A DNA stretch of 64,000 bases from Octopus sinensis (lineage: Eukaryota). The stretch covers positions 83,948,001 to 84,012,000 of the forward strand of contig NC_043001.1 of NCBI RefSeq assembly GCF_006345805.1, read 5' to 3'. Positions 5,972 to 26,280 of the stretch are shown one piece after another. The position numbers were made by a program, and so were the translations under genes. The first letter of the stretch is position 1. Each line of letters opens with the position of its first letter. The notes under the pieces were generated by a model. That model was not told the origin of the DNA. It saw only the letters and a list, made by a program, of their open reading frames with translations, and did no database searches.

Positions 5972-7321
5972 GTAACGTATTATTTTCCTCATATTTATTA
6001 ATCTTAGTATTCTAATTACTATATCTTCAAAATAATTTGCCTCTTTTTCTGTCATTTTCCAGACACCGCTTCACAAATGTCTTTGATATATCTGTTAACG
6101 TTGAACCCCAAAAGGATATAGTTTACAATTTAACATACCAAGAACTTCTGACACGACAAGACTATAAATATAGGCACGTTATTCATTTGTCAAATGGTGG
6201 AATTATTGATGACTTTTTAGTTGAGGTTTTCATTACGGAACCTCAAGACATTATTGATTTGTCTGTACCTGAAATTATAGGTGATATATTAATGAATATC
6301 ACGGATAACACAGGTAGGTAACTAATTTATGCTTGGTTTACTCTATATTTTTATACAAGTTATCGTCATGGCTTGGATGTGGCCCGGCTTCTTTGTGTTT
6401 CAACAGTTTTGGGCCAAAACGTTTACATAAGGTCGTGGGAGTTTCTTCTCTGAAGATCTATTATTCAGCTCTCCCTAACATTTCTTACTAGACTGTCCAA
6501 CTATAGATATCATGCAGTACACACTTTGCACTATCTAATCATCAAATGGTATGCAGTCCTTCGTTAAATACTGTACTGTCTTACAGTAATAAAATGCTGC
6601 TTACGATATAGTTAATGTGAAGATGCCCTGCGCTGACATAACGTTACTCGCCCAAGGTAAACATTAATTCTGCCGCTGTTCGCTTTACATTGTTACACAG
6701 TTAATATGACACTGTTCTGTAGTCGACATTAGATAGTCCATGAAGCCGTTTAAATTATATCTCATGATGCTTGGTGATATTGAAATAATAGATATTTATT
6801 CGACTCTGTTATCAATTTATATTACGATGTTTGTTTTTCAAACAGAGCTAGATTCTGCTTCAATTGAGTATACCAGCAGTAGAGAGGTTTACATCAAATA
6901 CAGCCCAAGTCGTAAACAGCAAGAAGAAATTTCAGACAAAGATGGCGTTGCAGGCTTACTCAGAGTGGAATATAACGTGGATCGTCAAAATAATTCAAAT
7001 TTGATATACGTAAGATAATTATTTTTATGATAATTTCTCATCATGCTATTGTTCAATCTTATGAATGTATCACCATCATTTCTTCAAAACAACATATTCT
7101 GGAAAAAACTATAACTTTATCAGTTACAATGAATCATAATTATATTATAGTTGTCTGTAGGCGTAGGAGTGGCTGTGTGGTAAGTAGCTTGCTTACCAAC
7201 CACATGGTTCCGGGTTCAGTCCCACTGCGTGGCACCTTGGGCCGGTGTCTTCTTCTATAGCCTCGGGCCGACCAAAGCCTTGTAAGTGGATTTGGTAGAC
7301 GGAAACTGAAAGAAGCCTGTC

Positions 7322-7377
<56 letters not shown>

Positions 7378-10300
7378 ATATATGTATGTATGTATATGCG
7401 TGTATATGTTTGTATGTCTGTGTTTGTCCCTCCAACATCGCTTGACAACCGATGATGGTATATTTACGTCCCCGTAATATAGCGGTTCGGCAAAAGAGAC
7501 CGAATAGAATAAGTCCTGGGGTCTATTTGCTCGACTAAAGGCGGTGCTCCAGAATGGCCACAGTCAAATGACTGAAACAAGTAAAAGAGAAGCGTTATTA
7601 ACTTCATGTACAACAAATTGTTTTTATTTATTCTTTCTTTACCTTTTCCCTTTCTGTCTCTTTCCCTCTCTACCTTTCACTCACTCACACTCTCTCTCAT
7701 ATTTGAGTGTGCTCATGTTTCCATATTTCTATGTTAGCACGCCGGGCGAAATGCATAGCCGTATTTCGTCTGCCGTTACGTTCTGAGTTCAAATTCCGCC
7801 GAGGTCGACTTTGCCTTTCATGCTTTCGGGGTCGATTAAATAAGTAGCAGTTACGCACTGGGGTCGATATAATCGACTTAATCCGTTTGTCTGTCCTTGT
7901 TTGTTCCTTCTGTGTTTAGCCCCTTGTGGGTAGTAAAGAAATAGAAATAGGTATTTCGATCGTCGCTACGTTCTGAGTTTAAATTCCGCCGAGGTCGACT
8001 TTGCCTTTCATCCTTTCGGGGTCGATAAATTAAGTACCAGCTGCGCACTGGGGTCGATCTGATCGACTGGTCCCTACTCCCCCAAAATTTTGCGCCTTGT
8101 GCTTAGAGTAGAAATGAATATTAGTTAAGGGTAAGCCAATTGGTATTCATACCATTCTTAAGGGCATTACATTTGCCTAAAATACCACGTGGTAGGTTCG
8201 AACCTGGGACCTTGTGATTACAAAAATTTTCTGAAACGTCCAGCCATACTTCAACTACTTTTTGAGGAAACAATCTGAAATCGTATGGAATATGATTAAC
8301 TTAGCGTCAGGCCAGTAACTAGGAGTTATTTGAAACCTGTTTCATCCAATACTGCGGTACATTGAACACAGAGGAAGCGAGAATTATCTGAAATTACTAC
8401 ACTAAACTGATACTGAGCTACGTTAAGTATTTATGTATTTCCGATAAATTGGGTTACTCTGTTACTCTATGTCTTGTCAGTAAATTTGGTAGACATAAAA
8501 TATATGGACGTCCACCGCATGCATGCATGCATGTATGCATGTATGTATGTATGTATGGAATGTAGATAACGAAAACTATGTCACATTTTAAACCTGAGAA
8601 AAGTTTTACATTGTTCTACTGTTCCGCAAACAGACTGTATTTGTAATGTGCGAGTCGGTTGATTTTGTTTTTTCTGAAAATCCAAGCTTATAGAGGCTTA
8701 CGGTTAGGCATTTACCAGACTGACCAGCAATTACCAGACTGACAGTTAGACATGTATGTATGTATGTATGTATGTACTTATACATATTGTGACCCCCTTC
8801 GGTCATGAATGACCATGGTATTGCACCTAGAAAGTTACCCTCCGAGGCACAAGTCTGGGCAAAGTTGTTTATGGAAGACCAGCAGTCGCCCACGCATACC
8901 AGCTTCCCCTCTCCACGCCACCGATGTTATCCAAGGGAAAGACAAAAGCCGATACAGCTTGGCACCTGTGACGTCGCAGCTCATTTATTAACGTGCAAGT
9001 GGCTGCGCACTCCACCGACACGTGTGCCCTTAACGTAGTTCTCGGGGAGATTCAGCATGACACAGAGTGTGACAAGGCTGGCCCTTTGAAATACAGGTAC
9101 AACAGAAACAGGAAGAAAGAGTGAGAGAAAGTTGTGGTGAAAGAGTACAGCAGGGTTCGCCACTACCCCCTGCGGAAGCCTCGTGGAGCTTTTAGGTGAT
9201 ATATGCGATATAGTTTCAGTCTTAACATTACCATCTATATTTGTAATAGACCATACTAAATATTAGATGGGAAACTTTTCTGTGAACTATTAAGTTAAAC
9301 CGTCATTAACGTTTTATTCCTCCACCTTCCGCTCTCAAATTTCCAGGCATCTGATGGCTACTTTGTGCATTTCTTCACTCCCGATTCCTTACCAAGTCTT
9401 CCAAAGCACATTATATTTATGCTTGATGTCAGCGGATCAATGTATTGTTGTAAAATTGGACCCCTGAAAGAAGCTATGGAAAATATCCTTGATCAACTCA
9501 ATCCAGAGCTTGATGCATTTCTCATTGGAAAATTCAGTAGTGATGTTTCATGGATGATGGACAAATTTTTAATAGCGAACAATACTAACAAAGAATTAGG
9601 CAAAAATTACATTAAGGCACTCCAAGCCGATGGATGTAAGTTAAAAATTTATTTCTTATATTTATGTACACAAGTCTCAAACTGTTTCTCCATGTTATAT
9701 TTCATTACAATTTATTATAACATTTATTATTATAAAGTTTAATGCAGCGAGCTGGCAGAATCGTTAGCACGCCGGGCGAAATGCTTAGCGGTATTTCGTC
9801 TGCCGTTACGTTGTGAGTTCAAATTCCGCCTAGGTCGACTTTGCCTTTCATCCTTTCGGGGTCGATAAATTAAGTACCAGTTACGCACTGGGGTCGATGT
9901 AATCGACTTAATACCTATGTCTGACCTTGTTTGTCCCTTCTATGTTTAGCCCCTTGTGGGTAATAAAGAAATAGGTATTTCGTCTGTCTTTACGTTCTGA
10001 GTTCAATTTGCGCTGAGGTCGACTTTACCTTTCATCCTTTCGGGGTCGATTAAATGAGTACCAGTTACGCACTGGGGCCGATATAATCGACTTAATCCGT
10101 TTGTCTGTCCTTGTTTGTCCTCTCCGTGTGTAGCCCCTTGTGGGTTGTAAAGAAATAGGTATTTCGTCTGTCTTTACGTTCTGAGTTCAAATTGCGCTGA
10201 GGTCGACTTTGCCTTTCATCCTTTCGGGGTCGATTAATTAAATACTAGTTGCGCACTGGGATCGATCTAATCGTCTGGCTCCTCCCCACAAATTTTAGGC

Positions 10301-13300
10301 CTTGTTCATATAGTAGAAAGGATTATTATTATAATAAAGTTTAAGGCGGTGAGCTGGCAGAATTGTTAGCGCGCTATCATTATAAAATTTATTTTATTAA
10401 AACTTTTATTAATAACCCTAATTCTTTGAGTTACAGGCATTCTGTTATATTTTTCTCTGTGTGTATATGTAATTTTACTCTTGTTTCAGTTACAAATATC
10501 AACTCTGCTCTCCTTCAAAGTATAGAGAAACATAAACCTGCTCTAACCTCTACAAAGAAAAGTATCATCATCTTTCTCACTGACGGAGATCCAACTGTAG
10601 GAGTCACTGACGTCGAAATTATCAAGAAAAATGTCAGAGAAGCTAACGAACAGATTTCATTATTTGCCCTTTGTTTCGGAGAAGACTGTGACAGTAAATT
10701 TCTTCGTGAGGTTGCCACGGAAAATGGGGGCTTCAACGGGAAGATCTACGTAGACTCTGATAGTAGTCTCCAATTTGAAAATCTCTATAAAGAAATATCT
10801 AGCATTTTATTAAAGGACATTACGTTTGTTTACTTAGATGGTGCCGTTAATACTAGTTCTACATCATTTAGCAACTACTTCAAAGGATCAGAATTAGTTG
10901 TTTCCGGTGTTTTGTCGCAAGAATACCTATCGACCATAAAAGTAAATTTAACAATGACAAATTTTTGGGGTCGTGATAACGAAATATTGGAACTAGAATT
11001 ATATGGAGATGACTTTACCATATACGATGACGGTTTTTCACAAAATTCCAGTTTGACTAGTATTCAGTCATTTTCTGAAATTACCGAAAAGACTTATGCT
11101 TACATCACCTTGCAGCAACTTCTCAAGAAAAACAGAACAGAGGAAGTGCGACATGATATTCTTAATTTGGCTCTAAAGGTGAGTAAAAAGGATGTTATAA
11201 TTAGTTATTTACCTATATTTAAAAAATAAAATGGCTTATATTAATTATATTAGTTTAAATTAATTAGTTTATATTAGTTATCGTCATCACAGATTCATAC
11301 AAATCATTCAACCGACAAATCAGCCAATATGTATCTTAGTTGTTATTATTTAAAGATTCTAAGGCGGCGAGCTGGCAGAATCGTTAGCACGCCGGGCGAA
11401 ATGCGTAGCGGTATTTCGTCTGCTGTTACGTTCTGAGTTCAAATTCCACCGAGGTCAACTTTGCCTTTCATCCTTTCGAGCTCGATAAATTAAGTACCAG
11501 TTACGCACTGGGGTCGATGTAATCGACTTAATACCTATGTCTGTCCTTGTTTGTCCCCTCTATGTTTAGCCCCTTGTGGGTAATAAAGAAATAGGTATTT
11601 CGTCCGTCTTTACGTTCTGAATTCAAATGCCGCCGAAGTCGACTTTGCTTTTCATCCTTTCGGGGTCGATAAATTAAGTACCAGTTACGCACTGGGGTCG
11701 ATGTAATCGACTTAATCCATTTGTCTGTCTTTGTTTATCCCCTTTGTGTGTAGCTCTTTGTGGGTAGTAAAGAAATAGGTATTTCTTCCGTATTTACGTT
11801 CTGAGTTCAAATGCCGCCGAGGTCGACTTTGCTTTTCATCCTTTCGGGATCGATAAATTAAGTACCAGTTACATACTGGGGTCGATCTAATCGACTGGTC
11901 CCCCCCTCCCTCAAAACTTCAGGCCTTGTACCTATGGAAGAAAGGATTATCTAAAGAAAAACAAAAGGCAAAGTTGGACAAAATTGAACCAATATGAACG
12001 AAAGTGAATAATCTATTACCTTTATTCTAGCACTCTACGGCTTTAGCTATTTTCACAGCTCTTGAAGCTGATAGTTGCTACCTAAAATATACAAGCAGTG
12101 AAAACGTAGAAATATGATGTCGATGGTGGAGCGTTTGAATTGCATCTATTACATTCACGTATTGTTTTCATTTTAATATCTCTGTTTCACTAAATGCCTA
12201 ATTTTCTTCTTTGTCACAGTATAATTTCGTAACTCCATTAACATCAATGGTTGTCGCCAACTCAAAAGTAAAAGAACATTTTTTTGAAGAAGGTAATTTT
12301 TTTTCATTCATACCATTTTAAACTATTTTCATAAACTTCTTGTTGAAAGGAATTAGCCATGATCGTTTATCTCATAAAACTTAAAAGTACGAGGGGATGC
12401 TGAAAAGTTCCTGGATTTTAAGGGTGTCGTGAAAGGCCTGGCTTTTACAGGGTTCTTTTACAGGGCTTAGGAAAACTGAAGGACCGCTGCAATAAGTGTG
12501 TGAATCTGAGAGGGGAATATGTTGAATGAATAATTTCAGCAGCCCCTCGTATCTTCATTCTACTTTATATCATATCGTATCCCCTATTGCCATGATCTTC
12601 AGCTAGATATAAAATGTACAGATATGCATGATAATTTGGAAAATTAGGTGCTAAAGTAAAGTTCCTTCCCGAGTCATACCGACTTATAAGGGTTTCTAAT
12701 ATTGCGAGAAAAGATCTTGTAATAGTTTTTACAAGATCTCATAAAATTATTTGCTTTTTGTTTAAGTAACTCCTGAAGTTTCTGCGTGAGGCAAAGCATC
12801 TCTGATATTTATTTCACTTTTTCTGCTTACTTCTCTTATTCTAGCATCTTAATGTTCTCCAACAAATATATTATTACAACCCATTTCGGAGCTGTTGCTC
12901 AGCCTTAGTATTTTTATTTATATTCTTTGCACTATAAAAAGTCTGACCGAAGTATTTTCCTATCTCTTTTCTTAATGACAGTACATAACTACTCCGTCCA
13001 CATCATAACGATCTATTTCAGTAAATCTGTCTTCATCACTTCAACTATTAACTGCAGAAAGCTGTGACTAACGATGGAGAGATAGGCAACTTATTAAAAC
13101 AGTTCTTTATTCTTCCCATAGTTTTCCTTTTTGTGTTCGCTGTTCTTCTTTAATCAAACTTCTCTGAGGTGAGAAAGTATTATAATTGATAGTAAGATAT
13201 AATTACATTGTACGTGCTATGCAATATCGCAATGACTAATTTCATAATTTATTGTGACAATACATAATATTACATTAATTGTACTTTAGACTGATCCAGC

Positions 13301-14154
13301 AAACATTTTCATCTAATTACTATCTTAGTCTGTATCATACTGATACAAATAAAGAAAACCTGTATTTATGTAATTGTTTTAAAATTTATATGAGTTTTCC
13401 CATTATAACTGATACCACTGCTGGCACAGTTTTCACTATATTACTATGATTTCATACTATAAATTTTATTTCCAGATTAACCATTATTATTTCAATTGTC
13501 AACAATGTATTTCTCTTCCTTTGTAGAAACAAAACAAATTCCGCGACGTAAGTATATTCACATTTGACTTGTTTAAAATAACAATACTCTATGAACTCTT
13601 GCTTTCATAATCCATTTCAAGTCATGCATGAAATAAACAACTTTTGTTTTTTATTCTGTAGCTTTGGTTTTTTTATTCCGCGTATTACTAGTAATGTCAT
13701 TTTGATTGAGCACAAAACCATTTATTTTATATAGAAGTGATACAGAATATCGAAGCGACTCTAGTATATTACTTGTACTTATTTTATCGAGCCTATGAAG
13801 ATATAAGGTGATACCTGCACAATGAACTCGGCTGAGACCCCAGAACCATTTCACTCGTGGTTTATAGTCCCGCAAATCGGCATTGTGCGAATACTGAAGC
13901 AGAATATAGACGAGCTGACTATTCTTCGTATGCTTTGCATAATGCAAGATGCTAGCGGCTCACATGAGGCCTTATCTGTAGAGTTTATTCCTAACAAGCA
14001 CTCTTGGTAAAGGACTTTAAGAAATTGTTCATAATCCTTGAAAGTCCTCTAAAAGAGATGACAGAGATAACACTGTCGTCGAAACTCTGAAATTTTCCCG
14101 TGTCAACCATATTCTCTAGTAACCCTCTAAGAATACGCGGGCTGACGTCCCCTA

Positions 14155-14187
<33 letters not shown>

Positions 14188-17100
14188 AACTAATAATAAT
14201 AATAATAATTGCACTGGAACATATGCCGTCAGTATGATATTCCGCACCCTAGGAACTGGTATGAACACCATCCAGAGCCAGTCACTGAGGGAGAGAATGT
14301 TACCATTCTATGAGATTATGAAATACATTCAGACAGGCAAATAAATGATAACAAAGCTGATATCGTCATCAAAAACCTAAAACAAGAAACATGCCGGTTA
14401 ATTCATATCACAGTACCTACTGATAGAAACATCTCAACAAAAGAATTTGAAAAACTGTCGAAATATAAGGACTTTGAGATTGAGATAACTAGGACGTGGC
14501 AATTAAAAGCCAAAACTATCCCTGTTGTAGTAGGTGCCCTGGAAATGATCAAGAAAGGCACTGACACATTTTTTTTACCAGATCTCTGGGAAACCAACAG
14601 TCTATGAAACTCAAGAAGTTTCTCTCCATCTAGTATATACGTGCCTTAGGTCTCTGCTTGAGACCCAATCAGAACATGAAATAAAATGCAATTCAATCGG
14701 AAAATGGTAATAATAATAATAATGATGATAATAATAATAATAATAATAATGGTCTCAAATCTTTGCACAAGGCCAGCAAGTTCGGGGGAAGGCTACGTTG
14801 ATTACATCAACCCCAGTTTACGTCTGATCAAACTGTAGTGCGTACTTTTCCGCTTTCTGGGAAGGGACGCGTTCCGCTGTTCAAGTGCTCCATTTGTTGT
14901 CAACACCCGCTGAATGTAGGACTGGGCATGCGCTGAAGTTACGACATCTCCAGCACTTCCTTGACGATGAGCAGATGTGGTCACCTTTTGTTAGACTCGC
15001 TCTTCCGCAGCTCGTCTCTTTGACAGTTGCAGTTCTGGATCAAGCGTAGACAGGTACTCACAGCCCTCTGAAAGCCGGTCAATGTGGTCAGTGGAAGTTC
15101 CACTTTGGCATTTTATTGAGAGTTAGCGGCGAACAATGTGAAGGCGCATGACTCAGTGGTTAGAGCATCGAGCTTACGATCGTGAGGTTGTGAGCTCGAA
15201 TCCCGGACCGGGCTGCGTGTTGTGTTCTTGAGCAAGACACTTTATTTCACGTTGCTCCAGTTAACTCAGCTGTAGAAATGAGTTGCGATGCCACGGGTGC
15301 CAATCTGTATCGGCCCTTGCCTTTCCCTTGGATAACACTAGTGGCGTGGAGAGGGGAGACCGGTATGCATGGGCGACTGCTGGTCTTCCATAAACAACCT
15401 TGCCCGGATTTGTGCCTGGGAGGGTAACTTTCTAGGTGCAATCCCATGGTCAGTGTCGTGACCGAAGTGGGGCCCGACCGAGTGGCGAACAAGTGCATGA
15501 CGAGAATCAACTGGTTAGTGTGTTCCGGAGGACTTTCGGGCCGGGGCCCATAGATAATTTTCAGAAATTCATGGCTTGTCAGTACTACCAGGTAAATAAA
15601 CTCCACAGGCATGAAAGCGCCGTCAGCCAGGCTTGCCCGAAATGCACACAGAGCGACAAAACTCTTCTGCATGGTTTCGTTTAATGTCCAAGCATTGCTG
15701 ACTCGTGGGTTTATGTCGAACACCTGTTATCATGTGTAAGGCAGATGCGGCTATCAGCAGATTCCATTGTGAAGATCGTCTCGCCGCCTTCTTCTGGTCG
15801 GTGTGAGGGGAGGGGGGCAGATACTGCTTATTTCTTTGGTGATCTTAGCGAATGAGGTTGCATGGTGGACCAGATTGAAAAGGCTGAAGACAGATACTCT
15901 CCTCTTTGGCTAAGAGCTCATCAGCTTCTTCAAGTTGCACTTGAAAAGGAAGGTGAGGTTAGAGAGGAATGTGTTGCTTCCAGGCAATTTTATTGTAAGG
16001 TGGGTGAATGTTAGCAAGAATGATCTGCGCGAGTGGACCCACTCTAAGCATGCGCCTGTAGATTGAAGGAAGATGATGTGGAGAAGGCAGTTGATAAAGC
16101 CTTCATCGACTTTATCAAGTCCCACTTAGAAAAAAAAGTAAGGATGGAGAAGGTAATGCTGCTCTCTGTATTTTTGTTGAATGGTAAGTGAATGTGGTGG
16201 GTACAGCCCGTGTGGATGGTCCTACTCTCAGCAAGCAACTGCAGGCATGAGGGATTGAAGAGGAGAATGTTGCCTGCCTGAAGTGCCCTTGGCAATCAGG
16301 ATATCAAGGATATATGGGTTTCCCTAATTTTCCTAGGTTACTGCTCCCCACTTTTGGTGATTTTTTTCTTCTTTAATATCTAATTGTTAATTGTTATTGT
16401 TTCATTGTTCACATGTGTTTCTACGGGACTCCCCATAATCTAAAATTCTAAGTCGAACTTATAAAAACAGTTAAAATCCAATGAATATTTTTTTAGATTT
16501 ACGTTAACATAAATATCTATATATTTGATTGATATTTACATATCTTCATAATACTTTTTTTTTATTTTTTCAGATCACGTGCGATTTAGTAAGTAGATTA
16601 CTACTTCATATCAAATTCACATTTATAATTTTGCATTTAATAAATGTCTTATTTATAAATTTATATGTAAAATAAGAATCATTTCACTCTAAAGACACAC
16701 CTGCATCTAGAGTCCATGGAATGGAAATAAAATTCGGTGTGTTTTAGAAGAAAATCAGAAATTCTTGACAAAATATCTTCATTGGTTTATCGTGAGAATA
16801 AAAGCAAATGTCTTTAAAAGTAAAAAGGTAAAATGCAATCTTTTATGTGTGTTTATTGGCAGTAAGTAAATATTATTCTTTGTAGAATAAAGGCTAGAGA
16901 ATGTATTTAGAACCACATGTTTGTGCAGATGGAGATATTGAGTTCCCCAAGCTGTTACCACTGCTGATATTTTCTTTAAATCAAAATACATTACATTCAT
17001 TTTAATTTATCGATATCCTGGACCTCTGGTCCTTGCTCATGACGAAACAGATATTAATACAGGGTTGAAACAAGATACGTGTTTATTCGGATTTGAGTTT

Positions 17101-18194
17101 GCCGGCTGACAACAATAGTAATGGAATGTAAATGCGCCAAACGAATTCCTTGTTATTCGATGGCTGTTCTGTATTGATAGGAAGATTTTCCTATGAAGCC
17201 ATTTGCTTCTCCCAAAGCCATTTGGTGTGCTGACTGTTTTTTTTTTTTTTTTGAGAAGAAAAAACCCCGAAAAAACGATCTTTGATAATTATTCTGCTTC
17301 TGTTTCAAGGTTTATTACTCCGCCACGTTCTCGTTGGTAACCTGTGAAATCCAGTTATTTACTCGTCATCCAAATTAGATAATATACTGTTCATTTGTAT
17401 TTTTTTTTCTTTAAGAAAACGAATTAAGAATCGTGTTTTTAAAACTAAGTTAAAGAAAAAATAAAATAATCTTTATATTTTTAACGGCTTCTTCAACAAA
17501 TACACCCTTTTTAAACGTTTTATTTGTAACTGTCAACAGTATTTTTCATGGTGGACCATATATAAGTGATGACTGCTCTGTTGTTGGACGGTTTATTCTA
17601 GCATTCATAGGCCACTTTTTACATTTGCTTGGTTATCTGAGTAAACTACAATATATATCGTACCCACACAGCATCATGCACTATATTTGTACGTTGATAT
17701 ATTTCGATATATGTGAAGTAAATATTTTTATATTTAATACTCTCAAAACTATATGAAAAATCTATTATTTTTAGACATACGTTAACATAGTTTTATATTT
17801 GATATGTTCATAACAATATAAAATCTTCATTGCTTTTTCAGAACCCCACAGAGTAGGTAAGTAGACTCTCTCTTCATACCATTTATTTTATGTATATGGT
17901 AAACTAAAGCAAGGCAATCTTGAGAGACGCACTCGTATCTAGACTGCATTGAATTAAAATCTGGTTTCTTTTGTTTAGTTGAAAGAAAGCTGACCATTTT
18001 ACTCAAATAAGTTTTCGGTGGTTCTTTGGAAAGTATGAAATTTAAATTAAAAAGTTTTTATTGAGATGAAAATATTTTTTTATGACGAGTTAAAATACAT
18101 AATTATATAAATGTATGCGTACAAATATATATATATATATATATACACACACATATATATATACACACACACACACATATATATATATATTTAT

Positions 18195-18226
<32 letters not shown>

Positions 18227-18267
18227 TTATACACACACACACACATATATATATATATTTATACACA

Positions 18268-18327
<60 letters not shown>

Positions 18328-21300
18328 GCACAAAGTACGAGGCTAATACCAAGCTCCTGTTTAATGGTTATTCCCCAAAATGCTTTTAACTAACTATACA
18401 GATTGTTTTTTATTTCTCTTAATATTTACTAACAAATGGTTAACAGAGAAGACCTGCTCTATCCAATTTAAGTTACGTTTTGTCTTTATTTTGTCTTTTT
18501 GAGGGTGGAAATGCTTCGTTATTTTACTTGTCCATATAAAGCATCATAAATATCTGAACACCTGTTTCATTAATATTGATTTCTTCATTAAAAAATTGTA
18601 GAAAATCTCTTAAACGCAAAAATTACGTAATATTTGGTCTTTTGGTAATGCTTGTTCTATTTTACCATATAATCCCGATTCAAGATTAGTTATTTTATTC
18701 AGACACATCTAATATCGATCTAATATTAATGTAGCGGCTTTTTTTTTTTTGTTTACTGCAAATCAACCAAATTTGGTTAAACTGTTTTTAATAGCTAGAA
18801 TATGAATAACTTATCAAATATAATATTTTAACTAAAGACATAATTATATTCCAAACAATTTTTACAAATTCTATTATGAAACAAAAATATCACAAGAGCA
18901 TATTGTAGTATCTTATATTGTACACGTTTCAGTCATTAGTCTACTGCTATGCTGGGGCACCACCTTAAATAATTTTTAGTCGAATGAATCGACCCCAGAA
19001 TTTAATATTTCTTTTTAAGTCTGGTATTTATTTTATCGGCCTCTTTTGCCGAGCCACTAAGTTGCGGGGAGATAAACACACCAACAGAGCGTGATTGTGC
19101 CGACAATGTTTTATGGTGCAGATACGTGGGGGATGAAAGATGTAGAAAGGGGGCAACTAGATGTGTTTGAGATGAGATGTCTGAGGGCTATGGTTGGTGT
19201 GACACGGATGGACAGAATGAGGAGGTACGAAGATGAGCCGGAATGAAAGAAAAACTAACAACTAAATTGGATAGAGGGAATTTGAGGCGGTTTGGCCACA
19301 CGGAGAGGATGGATGAGGAGCGGATGGTAAGAAGGGTGATGAAGGCTGAAGTGGTAGGCAACAGAACTAGAGGCAAGCCTCGGTTTGTGTGGATGGATGG
19401 AGTGAGGAAAGCTTTGGTGGTTAGAGGTGTTGGAGTGAGAGAGGCAAGAGAGTTTATAAATGGCAGGAAAGCTTGGAGAGTGTTTGTGGATAGATGAGTG
19501 AATTTTGATGTTGCTCAAAGGGGTACAGAACCAGTATGGTGTGGCGGGGGTAAACCTGCATATGCTGTCGGGCCTCACTGCTGATATTGGGGGTTTGCGT
19601 TCTATGCCTTGAGCCGAGCATAGAACTGGGCTCGCCTCTTTGAGTTTGGGAAATGAACGGAATGCCTGCTGTGTGTCTTGCTGTGGCTACCCCCTCCTAG
19701 AAAAATAGGGAATAGGCCTGGATATATGATATGATATGATATGGTATGATGTGGTATGATGTGATGTGGTATGATGTGGTATGATATGATGTGGTATGAT
19801 GTGGTATGATATGATGTGGTATGATGTGGTATGATATGATGTGGTATGATATGATGTGGTATGATATGATGTGGTATGATATGATGTGGTATGATATGAT
19901 GTGGTATGATATGATATGATGTGGTGTGATATGATATTTTAGATTTCAGATATATTTTTGCAATTTTTTAATATAATTTGAATTTAAATATTATATTAGC
20001 CACAACACCGCCAGTGACTGTTCCCCGATCAACAAGACCCCCACGAAGAACTCCACGAAAACCAGTGCCAATCCTTCCACATATTCCTGGTAAGAAAACG
20101 CGTTACATTTATTTACTCATTTTAAAAATGATACCTTTTTGCTTTTAAACATGTTTAATTCTTTATCGAGATACTCCAACCAATATATTGACACATTTGT
20201 CATGAATAAATGTTGTAAAGAGTTCAATATTAAAAATGAGTCAGCAACTTTCATTTCTGAAATTTAAGATGTAAAATTTAAAATTATTCTTCGCACTCCT
20301 TCGTCAATTAATACTGATATATTAAAGAATTTTGTATGTGATTTGTATTGAATGGTGGTAATGCTGCGCGCTACCATCGACACTATTTTCTTCAAGATTA
20401 TTTTATCTGTTCACACATTCGACACCCATCAGACAGTTTAGGCTTTTTAAAGCAACTGTCCAATGTTAAGCTCTTAATAAATCTTTTGGGATGGTTTATA
20501 ACTGTAGCCGTTATCCCAACATTAATATGCGTATCTCTTATGTTAATATAAACGTTTTTGTTTCATAGTAAAGCTTCATATCGAAATAAGGTATCTAGGT
20601 ATATGGCACAACCAAGATGATCAATTATTTGTTTATAATAAATTATCATAATTTATTTCTAAATATGTTAATGGCTAGTACACTTTACGTTGTCGAGCGG
20701 TTACTGTTTATATCTCATTCAGAGATTTATTGATGCTTTGTTAATGTATTATAATCAAGGTATTTAGTTATTAGGAAGCTGAATATTCTGTTAGTTAGTT
20801 CACCTAAGTTACTAATTAATTAATCATTAAAAAAACTCTTCTATGGAAATTTACAGTTGATTAACCTATTTTGAAACGAACAGAGAAAACTTTGTATCTT
20901 TTCTATATCATTATGGAATAAGGCGGCGAGCTGGCAGAATCGTTAACATGTCGGACAATAATGCTTAGCGATATTTCGTCTGTCTTTACGTTCTGAGTTA
21001 AAATCCTATCGAGGTCGACTTTGCCTTTCATTCTTTCGAGATCAATAAAATAAGTACCAGTTGAATACTGGGGTCGATGTAATCGACTTACCTCCTCCCC
21101 AGAAATCCCTGGCCTTGTGCCAAATTTTGAAACCAATATTATCATGGGATATAAATTCCATAATAAATTTGTTTCGTAGCTTTCAGTTCGAGTAACAGAA
21201 AAGGGCGGATTCTTTTCTTTTACAAACTTATTAATAGTTCAAATATGCTTAGGGTACGCACACATTACTGTTTTGCGTTTCTATTAAGTCTTTTCTTTTA

Positions 21301-23359
21301 GTATTTCATTAATAGGATCTTTTCGGTTTGAACGGCAGTTTTTTCTAGCGGTGTCATATGAAATTGTCACCCATAATTATGACCCTAGTATCGATCTATT
21401 GCATTTCAATATGTTTTAGGGTTAGGGTTGGGGGGAAGGGTATCTTTTTTTCTTCACAAATGTAAATAAACCCAATCTGTTTCTTAAACGAGGGACATAT
21501 TCATACGGCACAGAATGTTTTTTTTATCTCAATAGACGTCAGTGATTGGTTGAAATTGCAGAAATTGAAGAAAAAAACAACAAATATCTTACAAACTATA
21601 GAATTTTCTCAATAAAGCCAAGAGAAAAAGATGTTTTATAAACACATTCTACCAGTATACGAAGTTTAAAATTTTTTAGTTACCTAGAAATTATGTTAAA
21701 AACTGTCGTTCAAACCGAAAAGATCCCATTAATAAATATGCGTACCACCATATGTGTATGAGTGTGACTGTGATTTACTCAGTGAAAATACATGAACATA
21801 TTTAATTTACATTCACATATTTTATTAATAGAAAACTGCTACGTTTGGAAATCATTTCTATTTGTTTTACTTTGTATTTCTAGCCATTTTACTAAAGCCA
21901 TTAAATTGCGAGGCAGAACTGTGTTTCACTGATAGTATTCAATGCAGAAACCAAACTGATATTGTGCTTTTGGCTGACAGAGCAGCAAGTAAGTGATTCA
22001 CTATTGTATTATATCTATCGAAATATAACTTGCCATTGATATATTTTCCACGACAGAATGAAATATTTCATGCGTTTTGCACAGGATTTTGTTGTTCTAT
22101 TTGCAATTTATTGAAGAGAGTGGCGTCAAAGTTGTTTAGTATTGGTTTCAAATTTTGGCACAAGGCCAGCAATTTCGAGGAAGGTAGTAGTCAATTACAT
22201 CGACCTCAGTGCTCAATTGGTATTTATTTCATCAATCCTGAAAGGACGAAAGGCAAAAGATGACCTCGGTGGAATTTGAACTCAGGAGGTAAAGAGAGAC
22301 GAAATGCTGCTAAGCATTCTGCCCGGCATGCTAACGACTCTGCCAGCTCTCCACCTTCAAATTTTCACAATATTAAGAACTACGTTGTACTCACCTTTAA
22401 TACTTCATGTGCAATTTAATGGATATTTAAATATGTAATGCTATTTATCCAGTATTAATCTATGCAGTGTCACATACCCCAAATCATAACAATGGAACTG
22501 CATAAACTATATCGCAGTACCGAAATATATAATATAACATAAGCTGTATTAAAATACGTGATACCTTATACGATATCATGGCAGAGAATTTGGTAACACA
22601 TAATGTATGTTCATTTCATTTGCATATATGAGAAAACAAAGACGATATGAAAAATATAATTAAGATTTGAATTTTCATAACATACACACTGCTTCCAATT
22701 CTAATTTTTCTAAATAATATATAATATTTTTGTGTTATATAAGAATTATAATTTAGGCCTTTAGAATTACAGCTGAAGTTTAGTATTGTCTCTCGAAAAA
22801 AATATCTGTATAGGTGTTATGTAAAGAAGTGTTTACTACAAAAAACTTGTAAGGAGATAATCAAACAAACTGTAATCCAATGCAAATTAGATAATTAAAT
22901 ATGATTCCAAGAGATGAGTTTACGAAGTGTGCTATGGAGATCCTGATGGTAAGTTATCAGGAACACAAGGAATTGTATTGAGTAGGTTTTAAAGTATCAA
23001 AGGATGATATATTCCAAAAGCAATTTGATGATGAAAGCAAAAAATAATCAGTATAGGATGAGGATATAGAGATTAAAGTTTTTAATTATATGTGAAATAA
23101 CATTTATATTCCATTTCATTGGAATGTAATCACACACATTGTAAAATAACTTATATACAGGGGAGTGCTGAAAAGTTCCTGGTTTTGGGGAAAAGAAAAT
23201 GCAGGAGGATCAGTCAATTATGCTTTTATTCAACCTGTTCTCTCAAATTCACATACTTATTACAGCAGGCTTTCAGTTTTTCTAAACCTTGTAAAAGAAC
23301 TTGGAAGGTTGGGCCTCCAAGCAATACCCCTAAAGCCATGAAGTTTTCAGTAGCCCATC

Positions 23360-23635: not shown

Positions 23636-26280
23636 CATGATTGACTGCTAGCTCCAAAAGTTTTTTTTATTCTCTCTCTATTTATTTCCTCGTGTTCCTT
23701 TCTGTTGAAGAGCGTAGGCTCAAAACGTAAAAGACTTTCTCACCTTCCCGAGCGCCAAATTAACACACCTGCTTGTTGTTTATACACCCGTCTTCGTCTT
23801 TTATTTTTCTGCAAATGTCAACTGTATATATTAACTTATGTATTTTATTTTAATATAATCTTACGTATATATTCTCTTTATTTTACAGAAATATATATTT
23901 ATGGCCAAGTGAGAAAGGTATCAGACACTAATTGTTTAGAAACTCTTGATAGAGTATTTGTAAATATCAGAAACAGAGTATCTGAATTTACTCCTGAATT
24001 TTTTAGAATAAGAGGTAAAATTTATGAAGGCAACATTCTGGAAAAAGTTCATCTCAAACTGGGAACATTCGTCCGGTTATTAGTATCAATTCAGAAAACT
24101 GAAAACTCTGAAAAAGTTATTTTCTTGCATTTTAAAATATACAGGAGCTTTATTGAACCCAAAGGAATTCTGAGTAAGTAATATTTCTTTTCTTTCTTTC
24201 TGTTTTTTTTTTGTTTTGTTTACAATTAAAGAAAATTCTTTGGTTGTATTAGATGAGTTTTCATTAGCATATAAACAGGAGGGCTATGAAAGTATTAATT
24301 ATTAATGACGAAAGAAATTAAAGAAGTGCTAAAAGTTTTAAAAGAGCTGTACCGTATCCACTCTATATTAATGCAATAATTTTAAGTATTAAATTAATAT
24401 TAATTAAAATTGGTTTCAAATTTTAGCATCAACCTCAGTTTTCAGTTGGTAATGAAGGCAAGGATGAAAGGTAAAGTCAACCCCAGCGGCAGTGGGGGTG
24501 CAATGGCCCAGTGGTTAGGGCAGCGGACTCGCGGTCGTAAGAACGCGGTTTCGATTCCCAGACCGGGCATGTGAGTGTTTATTGAGCAACAACACCTAAG
24601 CTCCACGAGGCTCCGGCGGAGGGGTGGGGGTGAACCTCACTGTACTCTTTCACCACAACTTTCTCTCACTCTTTCTTCCTACTTCTGCCATAAAGTAGAG
24701 GAACCATGCTGAAAATCACATTGGTGTCGTAAATTTTCAGACTCTAGTCTAGATTACGAATCTTCTGTACCCCAGGATGGTTCAGCTCTCCACCCGTTAA
24801 AAGCCACCGTTTACGGAATGAAAATAACAACGTAGCTTTCGCGCCCGTGCAACCGCCAGTCTATCGCGTGTGGAGGGTGGATCTTCAAGTTGCCAAGCTC
24901 ATTCTTAGTAGCTTAGAGTAGGCTCGAATTAGAAATTATTCTTTGTGGCTAATGGCGTGAGTCCTGATTAGAAGAAAACCTCAGCGGCATTTGAAATTAA
25001 AACCTAAAATCGAAAGAAATGCTGCAAAGTATATTTTCCCGGTGCGGTTATGATTTTGTTAGTTCGCTGCCTTAATTTCAATTGAAATACTGGCTTCATA
25101 TTTTGGAACAAGGCCAGTAATTTCATCGATCTCAATGCTCAACTGATACTGATTTTGTCGACTCCGAAAGGATGAAAGGCAAAGTCGACCTCTGCGGAAT
25201 TTGAACTCAGAACGTAAAGACGGATGAAATGCCGCTAACGTTTCTACCAGCTCGCCGCTTTAATTTCAACTTAAATATTTGACATCAGTTGTATAGAGTG
25301 ACACACAACCATTTTTAGTGACGTTTGGGATATTCACTAATTGACCATTTATGTCTTCTGCTATGGCTGCAATGTGAAGGCGCATGGCTCAGTGGTTAAA
25401 GCGTCGAGCTTACGATCGTGAGGTTGTGAGCTCGAATCCCGAACTGGGCTGCTTGTTGTGTTCTTGAGCAAGACACTTTATTTCACGTTGCTCCAGTTCA
25501 CTCAGCTGTAGAAATGAGTTGCGACGTCACAGGTGCCAAGCTGTATCTGCCTTTCCCTTGGATAACACTGGTGACGTGGGAGGGGAGGCAGATATACATG
25601 GGCAACTGCTGGTCTTCCATAAACAACCTTGCCTGGGGTTGTGCCTGGGAGGGTAACTTTCTAGGTACAATCCCATGGTCTGTGTCGTGACCGAAAGGGA
25701 GTCTCAGATATAGATGCAATAAACTTCCTGTAGGAATATTTTTGCAGAACAAATACTACATTCACATCAAAAGGTATAAGATGTCATAAAACAAGTTAAT
25801 TTTGAAACATAAAGACATGTTTTCTAGCCATTTTTACAAAATATTTTTAGTAAATGAATAACTGTTTTACATTTTAAAACGAAAAACTAAATTTGATACA
25901 CATACAAGACGCGTGAAAAACAGTTAAAAGAGTATTAAAAATTATTTTTTGGTATTTTTTCATGTTGACTCTTTGTTTATTACTACAATTATATGAAAAC
26001 TTACATAAACATCTATTATATTTTCTATGTTAATTCAATCTTCAAAAGTATATTAAAGGGATGTATGATATTTAAAATAAATTGATTCCAAGATTCGCTG
26101 TCTAATGAAGATATATTATTAATTTGTTAATACGTTTCCATTTCAGGTGATTATGTAAAAAACTTACACTGTACTAGACAGTCACCGAACCAGATAGTTT
26201 TGTCTAATAAAGTGACTGCTTTTCATAAAGTCAAGTACAAAACCATCATTAGACGTTGGAAAAGATGTTTTAAAATGTGA
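5861..26280 (+). CDS. ITIH-like: Inter-alpha-trypsin inhibitor heavy chain-like protein (VIT-vWA-linker-C-terminal domain), 5'-incomplete. Exons: 5861-5971, 6063-6313, 6846-7009, 9347-9635, 10490-11178, 12220-12292, 13527-13547, 16574-16588, 17842-17856, 20000-20089, 21884-21988, 23889-24173, 26147-26280
   Basis: All introns are GT-AG with compatible phases; summed length 2242 nt = 1 + 747 codons ending TGA. Motifs: VIT (EIDGNVTVGEVKEK..A...Y..AV..GQSAG; F.ISVNVEP..Y.LTYQELL), [43 protein letters not shown]. Confidence 0.88.
6063..6313 (+). CDS. ITIH-like exon (VIT C-terminal part)
   Basis: TTCCAG|...|GTAGGT; HRFTNVFDISVNVEPQKDIVYNLTYQELL... Confidence 0.88.
6846..7009 (+). CDS. ITIH-like exon
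   Basis: AACAG|...|GTAAGA; LDSASIEY...YSPSRKQQ...GVAGLLRVEYNVDR. Confidence 0.85.
7160..7589 (+). mobile_element. SINE family B, near full length, with internal (TA)n
   Basis: GGAGTGGCTGTGTGGTAAGTAGCTTGCTTACC head, (TA)n core, and ...GACTGAAACAAGTAAAAGAG end. Confidence 0.85.
9347..9635 (+). CDS. ITIH-like exon (start of vWA domain)
   Basis: TTCCAG|...|[38 protein letters not shown]. Confidence 0.9.
9743..10320 (+). mobile_element. SINE family A with head-to-tail triplicated ~180-bp body
   Basis: GGCGAGCTGGCAGAATCGTTAGCACGCCGGGCGAAATG head, then three TATTTCGTCTG...GGGGTCGAT units. Confidence 0.85.
10490..11178 (+). CDS. ITIH-like exon (vWA domain and downstream helices)
   Basis: TTTCAG|...|GTGAGT; TNINSALL...IIFLTDGDPTVG...LFALCFGEDCD..FL..VATENGG...FSNYFKGSELVVSG. 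Confidence 0.92.
11364..11948 (+). mobile_element. SINE family A with triplicated body
   Basis: Same architecture as 9743-10320. Confidence 0.85.
12220..12292 (+). CDS. ITIH-like exon
   Basis: TCACAG|...|[18 protein letters not shown] is a hallmark ITIH motif. Confidence 0.88.
12390..12549. mobile_element. Mariner-type MITE
   Basis: TA|CGAGGGGATGCTGAAA ... TTTCAGCAGCCCCTCG|TA imperfect TIRs with TA TSD. Confidence 0.75.
13527..13547 (+). CDS. 21-nt micro-exon (E-TKQIPR)
   Basis: Polypyrimidine tract TTTCTCTTCCTTTGTAG| and consensus donor |GTAAGT; phase 1-1. Confidence 0.7.
14209..14707 (+). mobile_element. 3' end of an R4/Dong-like (restriction-like endonuclease) non-LTR element
   Basis: Decayed translation LHWNICRQYDIPHPRNWYEHHPEPV...KADIVI...ITVPTDRNISTKEFEKLSKYKD..IEI...W; (TAA)n on both sides. 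Confidence 0.8.
14835..16030 (+). mobile_element. Decayed L1/Tx1-like LINE 3' region, split by a SINE at about 15137-15470
   Basis: FRFLWEGRVPL...QHPL..GLGM; C-terminal Zn finger CPKC...LH...CP; FFKLHLKRKVRLER. A related fragment lies on - at about 45725-46140. Confidence 0.7.
16574..16588 (+). CDS. 15-nt micro-exon (H-HVRF)
   Basis: TTTATTTTTTCAG|ATCACGTGCGATTTA|GTAAGT; phase 1-1. Confidence 0.68.
17842..17856 (+). CDS. 15-nt micro-exon (K-PHRV)
   Basis: GCTTTTTCAG|AACCCCACAGAGTAG|GTAAGT; phase 1-1. Confidence 0.68.
   Translation, partial: NPTE
19085..19937 (+). mobile_element. RTE-clade LINE 3' fragment, 3' UTR and tandem tail
   Basis: VPTMFYGADTW...FEMRCLR...; LRRFGHTERMDEERMVRRVM...GNRTRGKPRFVWMDGV; tail satellite at 19721-19937. 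Confidence 0.8.
19721..19937. repeat. 5/10-bp period minisatellite (ATGAT/GTGGT)
   Basis: Tandem GATATGATGTGGTAT units. Confidence 0.9.
20000..20089 (+). CDS. 90-nt Pro/Thr/Arg-rich linker exon
   Basis: TATTAG|...|GTAAGA; TTPPVTVPRSTRPPRRTPRKPVPILPHIP; a GC-rich island in an AT-rich intron. Confidence 0.8.
21315..21726. mobile_element. MITE with ~29-bp TIRs and 8-bp TSD (Merlin-like ends)
   Basis: TIRs GGATCTTTTCGGTTTGAACGGCAGTTTTT and AAAAACTGTCGTTCAAACCGAAAAGATCC; TSD CATTAATA at 21307-21314 and 21727-21734. Confidence 0.85.
21884..21988 (+). CDS. ITIH-like exon (start of C-terminal domain)
   Basis: TTCTAG|...|GTAAGT; ILLKPLNCEAELCFTDSIQCRNQTDIVLLADRAA. Confidence 0.78.
23395..23586 (-). 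mobile_element. ~200-bp repeat with hammerhead-like core, bounded by (TA)n
   Basis: Minus strand CTTT-CTGTAGA-AGATCGTAGGCTC-GAAA-CGTA-AAAG; related to 23631-23829 and 27384-27598. Confidence 0.6.
23631..23829 (+). mobile_element. Second copy of the ~200-bp hammerhead-like repeat, head-to-head with the first
   Basis: CTTT-CTGTTGA-AGAGCGTAGGCTC-AAAA-CGTA-AAAG, then the shared CC(C/T)GAGCG downstream motif. Confidence 0.6.
23889..24173 (+). CDS. ITIH-like exon (C-terminal domain)
   Basis: TTTACAG|...|GTAAGT; 285 nt open, IYIYGQVRKV...LHFKIYRSFIEPKGIL. Confidence 0.8.
26147..26280 (+). CDS. ITIH-like probable last coding exon
   Basis: TTTCAG|GT GAT...; open to TGA at 26278-26280 (...RRWKRCFKM*). 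Confidence 0.65.

What the first reader, a model, noticed from the sequence alone, without database searches (positions are those of the whole stretch)
13527..20089. Micro-exon cassette (21, 15, 15 and 90 nt) encoding the linker of the ITIH-like protein
Seen: three tiny exons, each with a strong pyrimidine tract, AG and a perfect GTAAGT donor, lie 1.2-3 kb apart. All are phase 1-1 and multiples of 3, and they join to E-TKQIPR-H-HVRF-K-PHRV-A-TTPPVTVPRSTRPPRRTPRKP. The 15-mers resemble each other (HHVRF, KPHRV). Known: symmetric micro-exons allow combinatorial skipping (schistosome MEGs, neural micro-exons), and ITIH4 has a protease-sensitive Pro-rich linker in this position. Inference: a splice-tunable basic, His/Arg-rich linker or cleavage region that automated annotation probably misses. 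This is the strongest candidate for novel biology in the window.
Basis: partly seen in the sequence, partly recalled or inferred. Interest (0 to 1): 0.72.

Follow-up and report, generated by a model that had tools for sequence, protein, structure and literature searches.

The report
Micro-exon linker of an octopus ITIH-like gene
Three tiny exons (21, 15 and 15 bases) plus a 90-base exon really do encode the flexible, proline- and arginine-rich linker of an octopus relative of the inter-alpha-trypsin-inhibitor heavy chains. Public annotations already include them, and related octopus genes build and alternatively splice the same linker from similar tiny exons.

Summary
Exons 13527-13547, 16574-16588, 17842-17856 and 20000-20089 have the stated splice signals. 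All are phase 1-1 and join exon 12220-12292 to exon 21884-21988 in one open frame.

They are real coding exons. The Octopus vulgaris protein CAI9723137.1 (98% identical) contains exactly this peptide. Two O. bimaculoides paralogues and an Argonauta hians homologue build the same linker from 6, 7 and 12 exons of 15-72 nt, all multiples of 3.

O. bimaculoides RefSeq isoforms X1-X5 differ only by skipping 15- and 18-nt linker exons. One of these is homologous to window exon 17842. Splice tuning is therefore supported in a congener, but not shown for this gene.

The two 15-mers are diverged tandem duplicates. Exon bodies differ more than their intron flanks. The window also holds the relic of a lost micro-exon near 18.49 kb.

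The claim that annotation misses these exons is wrong. Cassette splicing of the ITIH linker also appears in oyster, bowfin and hagfish models. I found no paper describing it in cephalopods.

Verdict: a real, ordinary-to-moderately interesting new member of a known kind.

The parts
12220..12292 (+). Conventional exon encoding YNFVTPLTSMVVANSKVKEHFFEE. It ends in phase 1 (donor gtaatt) and is the last exon of the heavy-chain body before the linker.
   Evidence: It is 80% identical in nucleotides to the O. bimaculoides homologue.
13527..13547 (+). Micro-exon 1: 21 nt, phase 1-1, encoding (E)TKQIPR(H).
   Evidence: It is present in O. vulgaris CAI9723137.1 at L003 34088-34108. Its flanks are homologous to the O. 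bimaculoides exons L006 29426 (15 nt) and L004 19027 (27 nt).
16574..16588 (+). Micro-exon 2: 15 nt, phase 1-1, encoding (H)HVRF(K).
   Evidence: The O. vulgaris copy at L003 37128-37142 differs by one synonymous base. Its flanks are homologous to L006 30955 and 33185.
17842..17856 (+). Micro-exon 3: 15 nt, phase 1-1, encoding (K)PHRV(A). It is a tandem paralogue of micro-exon 2.
   Evidence: It is homologous to O. bimaculoides L004 28544-28558 (PNRV, 11 of 15 nt), which RefSeq isoform X2 skips.
16474..16573 (+). Conserved intronic flank upstream of micro-exon 2. It holds TACGTTAACATA, a TTGATAT-T-CATA(A) motif at about -45..-25 that resembles a branch point, and a long T tract.
   Evidence: The function as a splicing signal is inferred, not shown.
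17718..17841 (+). Conserved intronic flank upstream of micro-exon 3, with the same motifs. It is 76% identical to the flank of O. bimaculoides exon L004 28544.
18449..18525 (+). Relic of a lost micro-exon. Both flanks of the O. bimaculoides 18-nt exon (L006 42084) and 24-nt exon (L004 21152) are conserved. The exon body is deleted at about 18491-18492, and the donor gtgagtag has become gagggtgg.
   Evidence: alignment A3. The state is the same in O. vulgaris L003.
20000..20089 (+). Last linker exon: 90 nt, phase 1-1, encoding (A)TTPPVTVPRSTRPPRRTPRKPVPILPHIP(A). It has a weak pyrimidine tract and donor gtaaga.
   Evidence: Its 3' end is homologous to L006 45170 (72 nt), L004 29360 (66 nt) and L005 29389 (39 nt).
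21884..21988 (+). First exon of the C-terminal domain: 105 nt, phase 1-1, encoding ILLKPLNCEAELCFTDSIQCRNQTDIVLLADRAA. It begins at the position of the DPHF motif of other ITIHs.
5861..11178 (+). Upstream exons of the same gene: 5861-5971, 6063-6313, 6846-7009, 9347-9635 and 10490-11178. They encode the end of the VIT domain and the vWA domain, including the MIDAS motif DVSGS. The first roughly 79 codons lie outside the window.
23889..26280 (+). Last two exons, 23889-24173 and 26147-26280 (stop TGA at 26278-26280). They encode the rest of the diverged C-terminal domain.

Best explanation
The window carries most of an intact ITIH-like gene of the Octopus vulgaris/sinensis group. Its intrinsically disordered linker lies between the VIT-vWA body, which ends at FVTPLTSMVV, and a diverged C-terminal domain. 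The linker is encoded by an array of symmetric phase 1-1 exons of 21, 15, 15 and 90 nt.

How the exons are recognised. Each micro-exon has very strong signals: a long pyrimidine tract, CAG or TAG, GTAAGTAG/T, and a conserved upstream motif resembling a branch point. That is what exons too short for exon definition need (inferred).

How the array evolves. It grows and shrinks by tandem duplication and loss of intron segments that carry a micro-exon. This is shown by the mex2/mex3 duplicates, the relic at 18.49 kb, the different arrays in the paralogues, and the Argonauta (15+33)x5 array.

What constrains the exons. The exon bodies are only weakly constrained in sequence, but their lengths are always multiples of 3.

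Consequence for splicing. Because every unit is phase 1-1, any subset can be skipped in frame. This is shown for a congener's paralogue and inferred here. Skipping would change the length, charge and number of Arg/Lys/Pro sites of a 47-residue linker that is 26% Pro and net +10.

Likely role. The linker corresponds in position to the protease-susceptible region of human ITIH4 (function inferred).
For: The exons are real.
- O. vulgaris CAI9723137.1 (P0027, 98% identical) contains ...EETKQIPRHHVRFKPHRVATTPPVTVPRSTRAPRRTPRKPVPILPHIPAILLKPLNC....
- That peptide maps onto exons of 21, 15, 15, 90 and 105 nt in the collinear locus L003.
- With these exons the window yields an open 747-codon frame with VIT and VWA domains.

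The architecture is conserved.
- O. bimaculoides L004 has linker exons of 27, 24, 18, 15, 18, 15 and 66 nt.
- O. bimaculoides L006 has 15, 15, 15, 15, 18 and 72 nt.
- Argonauta L005 has 24 nt, then (15, 33) five times, then 39 nt.
- All 29 linker exons across the four loci are multiples of 3.
- Flank homology links mex1, mex2, mex3 and ex4 to specific O. bimaculoides exons.

The exons behave as cassettes.
- RefSeq isoforms X1-X5 (834, 829, 828, 823 and 823 aa) differ only by PHFSDP, HPNRV or DHLFQQ+HPNRV.
- All 8 skip combinations in the window are in frame and free of stops.

Duplication and loss.

Exon bodies diverge more than flanks.
- Octopus 15-nt class: exon identity 0.35, against 0.60 upstream and 0.53 downstream.
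- Argonauta 15-nt class: 0.71 against 0.84 and 0.78.
- Argonauta 33-nt class: 0.65 against 0.91 and 0.79.

The linker is disordered. AlphaFold2 gives pLDDT below 50 and no secondary structure for residues 597-664 of P0175.

The body is ITIH-like. The best PDB fold match is ITIH1 6FPY, E = 1.5e-53.

The position equals the ITIH4 PRR/PSR (PMC7793589).
Against: - No RNA reads or cDNA of this gene could be examined.
- The O. vulgaris model comes from a pipeline that mixes Iso-Seq and RNA-seq with protein alignments and ab initio calls (PMC10700109). It is itself imperfect: it skips two vWA exons and ends in a different 3' exon.
- Only one O. vulgaris isoform is on record. Near-consensus splice sites would also fit constitutive inclusion.
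- Window and O. vulgaris are 94-98% identical even in introns, so that comparison says nothing about constraint.
- The faster divergence of exon bodies rests on a few paralogues and on ungapped comparison of short, T-rich flanks.
- Any protease-related function is untested.
Confidence: 0.8

Rival explanations
1. Constitutive spacer. The micro-exons are real but always included in this gene. The fragmented exon structure is a neutral by-product of tandem duplication inside a low-constraint linker, with no regulatory or adaptive role.
For: - Only one O. vulgaris model is on record, and it includes all the exons.
- The three micro-exons have near-perfect splice signals.
- Exon bodies look almost unconstrained: identity 0.35 against a composition null of 0.25.
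- ITIH linkers are variable and repetitive across animals.
Against: - Homologous 15- and 18-nt exons are skipped in O. bimaculoides RefSeq isoforms.
- Linker cassettes vary between isoforms in oyster, bowfin and hagfish models.
- All 29 linker exons keep phase 1-1 despite length changes.
Confidence: 0.3
2. Diversifying bait region. The linker is a protease bait like the ITIH4 protease-susceptible region or the alpha-2-macroglobulin bait. Exon bodies evolve faster than introns because of positive selection from changing target proteases, and splicing multiplies the bait variants.
For: - The position is the same as the ITIH4 PSR.
- The vWA domain keeps its MIDAS motif DVSGS...T...D.
- The ITIH4 mechanism depends on cleavage in the PSR plus the MIDAS site. 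The PSR varies between species in the way the alpha-2-macroglobulin bait does (PMC7793589).
- The linker has 11 Arg/Lys in 47 residues.
- Exon bodies diverge more than flanks.
- Peptides of family members were found in the O. vulgaris ink proteome (PMC10142993).
Against: - There are no cleavage, binding or population data.
- Relaxed constraint, together with purifying selection on the flanking splice signals, explains the same pattern.
- Charge and composition differ widely between paralogues, from net 0 to net +10.
Confidence: 0.25
3. Chance or annotation artefact. The splice-like sites are accidental, and the true transcript joins 12292 directly to 20000 or 21884.
For: - The introns are AT-rich and full of T tracts.
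- 15-nt open frames are cheap.
- The O. vulgaris gene model has other errors.
Against: - The pattern is expected 0.01 times and found twice.
- Three independent annotations in three species place homologous micro-exons at homologous flanks.
- Splice sites and multiple-of-3 lengths survive 20-35% flank divergence.
Confidence: 0.03

Closest known systems
Proline-rich / protease-susceptible region (PRR/PSR) of vertebrate ITIH4, and the variable linker of ITIH heavy chains in general
   Same: - The position is the same, between the FVTPLTSMVV motif and the C-terminal domain.
- Both are Pro-rich, predicted disordered and highly variable between species (PMC7793589).
- RefSeq models from bowfin, oyster and hagfish also vary by in-frame linker cassettes.
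   Different: - Here the linker is broken into 15-27-nt exons separated by 1-3 kb.
- There is no sequence similarity to the vertebrate PSR.
- Protease cleavage and inhibition are untested.
- The DPHF consensus of ITIH1-3 is absent.
Schistosome micro-exon genes (MEGs)
   Same: - Symmetric exons whose lengths are multiples of 3, separated by long introns.
- Variant proteins produced by exon skipping.
- Secreted products and fast-evolving exons (PMC4350168; bioRxiv 10.1101/2023.06.21.545858).
   Different: - In MEGs most of the coding sequence is micro-exons and the proteins are small.
- Here only 51 nt of micro-exons, plus a 90-nt exon, sit inside a coding sequence of about 2.5 kb for a conserved multidomain protein.
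- There is no homology to MEGs.
Combinatorial mini-exon cassettes in hinge or spring regions: troponin T 5' mini-exons, the NCAM muscle-specific domain (15, 48, 42 and 3 nt), titin PEVK exons. Recalled from my own knowledge and not checked here.
   Same: Arrays of short in-frame cassette exons encoding an unstructured segment whose length and charge are set by splicing.
   Different: - Different proteins and lineages.
- Those cases have direct transcript and functional evidence.
- Here skipping is documented only as RefSeq models in a congener.
Neuronal SRRM4/nSR100-dependent microexons
   Same: The size range is the same (27 nt or less), and the exons are in frame.
   Different: - Neuronal microexons are strongly conserved in sequence, whereas these are among the least conserved parts of the gene.
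- A UGC motif close to the 3' splice site is present at only 1 of the 3 micro-exons.

Membership tests
[quoted passage not shown] | N-terminal VIT domain (PF08487) | tested here: met
   The window's spliced product matches VIT at E = 2.5e-13 over profile positions 50-111; the first part lies outside the window. The homologues carry a full VIT domain.
[quoted passage not shown] | vWA domain with a MIDAS motif | tested here: met
   PF00092 at E = 2e-13 and PF13768 at E = 7e-15. DVSGS, GFTNIN and LTDGD are present in the translated exons.
[quoted passage not shown] | Conserved [YF]xFVTPLTSMVV motif after the vWA region, and overall fold of the heavy-chain body | tested here: met
   YNFVTPLTSMVV is encoded at 12220-12255. 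The AF2 model of homologue P0175 matches ITIH1 6FPY at E = 1.5e-53, with a target-normalised TM-score of 0.77.
[quoted passage not shown] | C-terminal ITI_HC_C domain (PF06668) | tested here: inconclusive
   Pfam finds no hit in the window product or in four cephalopod homologues. A MAFFT alignment with other metazoan ITIHs does line up P...LCF...LL-D...G-LG-[FY]...C[WF].
ITIH1-3 type (bikunin / hyaluronan-linked heavy chains) | DPHF[IV][IV] consensus, whose Asp is cleaved and esterified to chondroitin sulfate | tested here: not met
   The aligned position reads IPAILL in the window and SPVILI, SPGVLL, RPGIVI and IPGIIL in the relatives. None has the Asp.
ITIH4-type protease-susceptible region | Long, Pro-rich, species-variable segment between the heavy-chain body and the C-terminal domain | tested here: met
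   47 residues with 26% Pro. Predicted disordered in the homologue. Position shown. The human PSR has 17.3% Pro (PMC7793589).
ITIH4-type protease-susceptible region | Cleavage by proteases, followed by Mg2+/MIDAS-dependent inhibitory complex formation | not testable with these tools
   This needs recombinant protein and protease assays.
Schistosome-type micro-exon gene (MEG) | Symmetric micro-exons with lengths that are multiples of 3 | tested here: met
   21, 15, 15 and 90 nt, all phase 1-1. All 29 linker exons in the four loci are multiples of 3.
Schistosome-type micro-exon gene (MEG) | Most of the coding sequence is made of micro-exons, encoding a small secreted protein | tested here: not met
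   Only 51 nt of the 2242 nt of coding sequence in the window are micro-exons of 27 nt or less.
Alternatively spliced cassette micro-exon array | Transcripts that include or skip individual micro-exons | tested here: inconclusive
   Shown for the O. bimaculoides paralogue as RefSeq isoforms X1-X5. No transcript data were reachable for the window's gene.
Neuronal SRRM4-type microexons | High sequence conservation and a UGC enhancer next to the 3' splice site | tested here: not met
   Exon identity among paralogues is 0.35. TGC lies within 40 nt upstream only at 17842.

The most novel reading that the evidence does not exclude
The micro-exon array is a fast-evolving protease bait that is diversified by splicing. 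Tandem birth and death of 15-33-nt exons, exon bodies that diverge faster than their own introns, and combinatorial skipping would together generate a repertoire of cleavage sites for an ITIH4-like, MIDAS-dependent protease-trapping protein secreted by octopods, for example into ink or mucus. If so, the cassette variation seen in ITIH linkers of oyster, bowfin and hagfish points to an ancient, unrecognised principle of this family.
Probability: 0.2. Interest if true: 0.7.

Novelty: new member of a known kind. Interest (0 to 1): 0.42.

Why it matters
The finding gives a clean, checkable example of very short exons (15 nt) in a non-neural, secreted invertebrate protein. Those exons are kept in frame over long evolutionary time while their sequence and number change quickly.

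It links the exon structure of the ITIH linker to the region that in human ITIH4 acts as a protease bait. It suggests that splice-generated linker variation may be common in this family.

For annotation, it shows that the current O. vulgaris model of this gene has the micro-exons right but probably has other exons wrong.

It does not reveal a new kind of mechanism.

Tried and rejected
- Word-index protein searches with the spliced peptide found nothing close. The exhaustive representative search, using the large vWA exon alone, found the relatives.
So were translations containing stop codons.
- I considered that ex4 might be a terminal exon whose read-through gives a hydrophobic, GPI-like tail, as in the invertebrate proteins P0006 and P0008. 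I rejected this because the frame continues through exons 21884, 23889 and 26147, and the relatives match them.
- Pfam did not recognise the C-terminal exons. An alignment was used instead.
- blastn found only a 27-nt match between the mex2 and mex3 regions. A local alignment with shuffles was needed to show the duplication.
- mex1 shows no convincing homology to mex2 or mex3.
- Rfam found nothing in the window at gathering thresholds.
- The comparison with O. vulgaris is too close (94-98% in introns) to show constraint.
- Argonauta introns do not align with the window, except at the upstream exon and at repeats.
- An exact look-up of window isoforms was not tried, because the first roughly 79 codons lie outside the window.
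Full report
**Observation.**
- The sequence at the stated coordinates is as described.
- Exon 12220-12292 encodes YNFVTPLTSMVVANSKVKEHFFEE and ends in phase 1.
- mex1 (13527-13547, 21 nt), mex2 (16574-16588, 15 nt) and mex3 (17842-17856, 15 nt) each follow a 12-13 of 14 pyrimidine tract and an AG. Each is followed by GTAAGT.
- ex4 (20000-20089, 90 nt) has a weaker tract (8 of 14) and donor GTAAGA.
- All four are phase 1-1. The joined peptide is EE-E-TKQIPR-H-HVRF-K-PHRV-A-TTPPVTVPRSTRPPRRTPRKPVPILPHIP.
- The pattern Y5-N-CAG-N15-GTAAGT occurs only at the two 15-mers in the whole window, against 0.01 expected.
- Of the four + strand sites that combine a perfect GTAAGT with a strong acceptor 9-60 nt upstream, three are the claimed exons.

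**Are they real exons?**
- The word-index protein search found no close relative.
- An exhaustive HMMER search with the large vWA exon (window 10492-11178) found P0027. This is Octopus vulgaris CAI9723137.1, 98% identical.
- Its sequence reads ...KEHFFDEETKQIPRHHVRFKPHRVATTPPVTVPRSTRAPRRTPRKPVPILPHIPAILLKPLNCEAELCF....
- Its locus (L003, OX597818.1) is collinear with the window at 94-98% identity, introns included.
- The peptide maps there onto exons of 73, 21, 15, 15, 90 and 105 nt with the same splice sites. mex2 differs by one synonymous base.
- The window therefore comes from O. vulgaris or a very close relative. I could not tell which.
- An existing annotation already contains these exons.
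- With the micro-exons included, the window gives an open frame of 747 codons through to a stop at 26278-26280. It carries VIT and VWA domains. About 79 N-terminal codons lie upstream of the window.

**Conservation of the architecture.**
- O. bimaculoides has two tandem paralogues.
- Paralogue A (XP_014784808-12, L004) builds the linker from exons of 27, 24, 18, 15, 18, 15 and 66 nt.
- Paralogue B (XP_052823892.1, L006) uses 15, 15, 15, 15, 18 and 72 nt.
- Argonauta hians (GAB1598744.1, L005) uses 24 nt, then five pairs of 15 + 33 nt, then 39 nt. A 3.53-kb segment holding four of these exons is duplicated at 99% identity.
- All 29 linker exons in the four loci are multiples of 3 and phase 1-1.
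- Flank homology ties the window exons to specific O. bimaculoides exons:
  - mex1 to L006 29426 (15 nt) and L004 19027 (27 nt);
  - mex2 to L006 30955 and 33185;
  - mex3 to L006 35213 and L004 28544 (11 of 15 nt; PNRV against PHRV);
  - ex4 to L006 45170.
- The same exon thus changes length (15, 21, 27 nt) but always in steps of 3.

**Duplication, loss and rate of change.**
- mex2 and mex3 are diverged tandem copies. About 330 nt of flank align with score 115, against 50 +/- 6 for shuffles. The exon bodies share only 6 of 15 nt.
- Between mex3 and ex4, at about 18.49 kb, both flanks of an O. bimaculoides micro-exon are conserved (L006 42084, 18 nt; L004 21152, 24 nt). The exon body is missing and the donor is mutated. 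This is a lost micro-exon.
- Across paralogous micro-exons, the exon bodies are less alike than the adjoining intron, even after removing the splice-consensus positions:
  - octopus 15-nt class: 0.35 against 0.60 upstream and 0.53 downstream, with composition nulls of 0.25, 0.40 and 0.36;
  - Argonauta 15-nt class: 0.71 against 0.84 and 0.78;
  - Argonauta 33-nt class: 0.65 against 0.91 and 0.79.
- By contrast, the conventional exons 12220-12292 and 21884-21988 are 78-80% identical to O. bimaculoides.
- There are two possible readings. The flanks may be held by selection for splicing signals while the coding part drifts, or the coding part may be under diversifying selection. The data here cannot separate them.

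**Alternative splicing.**
- RefSeq isoforms X1-X5 of O. bimaculoides paralogue A (834, 829, 828, 823 and 823 aa) are identical except in the linker.
- They lack PHFSDP (18 nt), HPNRV (15 nt, the homologue of mex3), both of these, or DHLFQQ+HPNRV. The junction codon changes as expected for phase 1.
- In the window, all eight combinations of the three micro-exons stay in frame without a stop.
- I could not reach any transcript data for the window's species.
- Skipping in this gene is therefore an inference.

**What the linker is.**
- An AlphaFold2 model of paralogue A gives pLDDT below 50 and no secondary structure for residues 597-664, which is the linker. The VIT-vWA body is confident, and its best PDB match is human ITIH1 (6FPY, E = 1.5e-53).
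- An alignment with other metazoan ITIHs puts the linker between FVTPLTSMVV and the position of the DPHF motif. The cephalopod proteins lack the Asp of that motif (IPAILL in the window).
- The C-terminal domain aligns with ITI_HC_C landmarks, although Pfam does not detect it.
- This is where human ITIH4 has its proline-rich region. That region has been redefined as a protease-susceptible region that acts as bait for a MIDAS-dependent inhibitory complex and varies between species (PMC7793589).
- The window's linker has 26% Pro, 11 Arg/Lys and net charge +10. The MIDAS residues are present.
- Peptides of related ITIH-like proteins were reported in the O. vulgaris ink proteome (PMC10142993).
- A bait function is possible but untested.

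**Comparison with what is known.**
- The closest functional analogue is the ITIH4 PRR/PSR.
- The closest structural analogues are the schistosome micro-exon genes and the classical mini-exon cassettes in hinge regions (from my own knowledge).
- The gene is not a MEG, because micro-exons make up only 51 of its 2242 coding nt in the window.
- The exons are not of the neuronal microexon type.
- Variation of the ITIH linker by in-frame cassettes is also visible in RefSeq models of Amia ocellicauda (X1-X8) and Crassostrea virginica. A hagfish protein is labelled isoform X44.
- Searches of the paper library found nothing on micro-exons in cephalopod ITIH-like genes.

**Verdict.**
- They are already annotated. 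The mechanism, an in-frame cassette micro-exon array that encodes a disordered linker, is a known kind.
- What this analysis adds: the octopod-wide conservation of the architecture, its turnover by tandem duplication and loss, the lost exon in this window, and the faster divergence of exon bodies than flanks.
- Interest is moderate.

Noticed in passing
window 18449-18525: Relic of a lost micro-exon. Both flanks of an O. bimaculoides 18/24-nt linker exon are conserved, but the exon body is deleted and the donor is mutated. O. vulgaris shows the same state.
   Followed up: yes
L003 (O. vulgaris) against window 6846-7009, 9347-9635 and 22413-22502: The annotated O. vulgaris protein CAI9723137.1 (552 aa) skips two vWA-coding exons that are intact in the window. 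It ends in a short alternative 3' exon (ILIYAVSHTPNHNNGTA) instead of continuing to 26280. This is either a mis-annotation or a truncated isoform.
   Followed up: partly
window 19725-19935: Minisatellite of 15- and 25-nt period (TATGATATGATGTGG, about 8-13 copies). It ends 65 nt upstream of the weak acceptor of the 90-nt exon.
   Followed up: no
L005 19228-25635 (Argonauta hians): A 3.53-kb tandem duplication at 99% identity carries four micro-exons (33, 15, 33 and 15 nt). It is either a very recent expansion or an assembly artefact.
   Followed up: partly
Proteins P0084 and P0185-P0190 (Amia ocellicauda), P0191-P0196 (Crassostrea virginica), P0074 (Myxine glutinosa, 'isoform X44'): RefSeq isoforms of ITIH genes in distant animals differ almost only by in-frame cassettes of 9, 12, 13 and 37 aa in the same linker. 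Exon sizes were not examined.
   Followed up: partly
window 640-2271 (+), 58017-58484 (+), 19237-19494 (+): Transposon remains. There is an open 544-codon reverse-transcriptase frame (RVT_1, E = 7e-33) and a weak integrase-core fragment. A frame resembling the tail of a LINE element lies inside the intron between mex3 and ex4, but it has no Pfam hit.
   Followed up: partly
window 15134-15466, 25370-25703, 8793-9035 and others: Repeated element of about 330 nt with a tRNA-like 5' part, probably an octopus SINE. Copies are present in several introns and at other places of L003. Rfam gives no match at gathering score.
   Followed up: no
window 5354-5714 against 6318-6800: A segment of intron sequence is duplicated around the exon 6063-6313, giving near-identical open frames at both places.
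   Followed up: no
L004 and L006 (O. bimaculoides CM046605.1, 108.21-108.31 Mb): Two ITIH-like paralogues lie in tandem. The second (XP_052823892.1, 1050 aa) has a duplicated VIT region.
   Followed up: no
window 47867-48091 (-): A 75-codon open frame on the minus strand (..FKDCVEEKLKPCVDKDEFEKILESFEESFNYICHEGFERM..) looks like an exon of another gene. It has no Pfam match.
   Followed up: no
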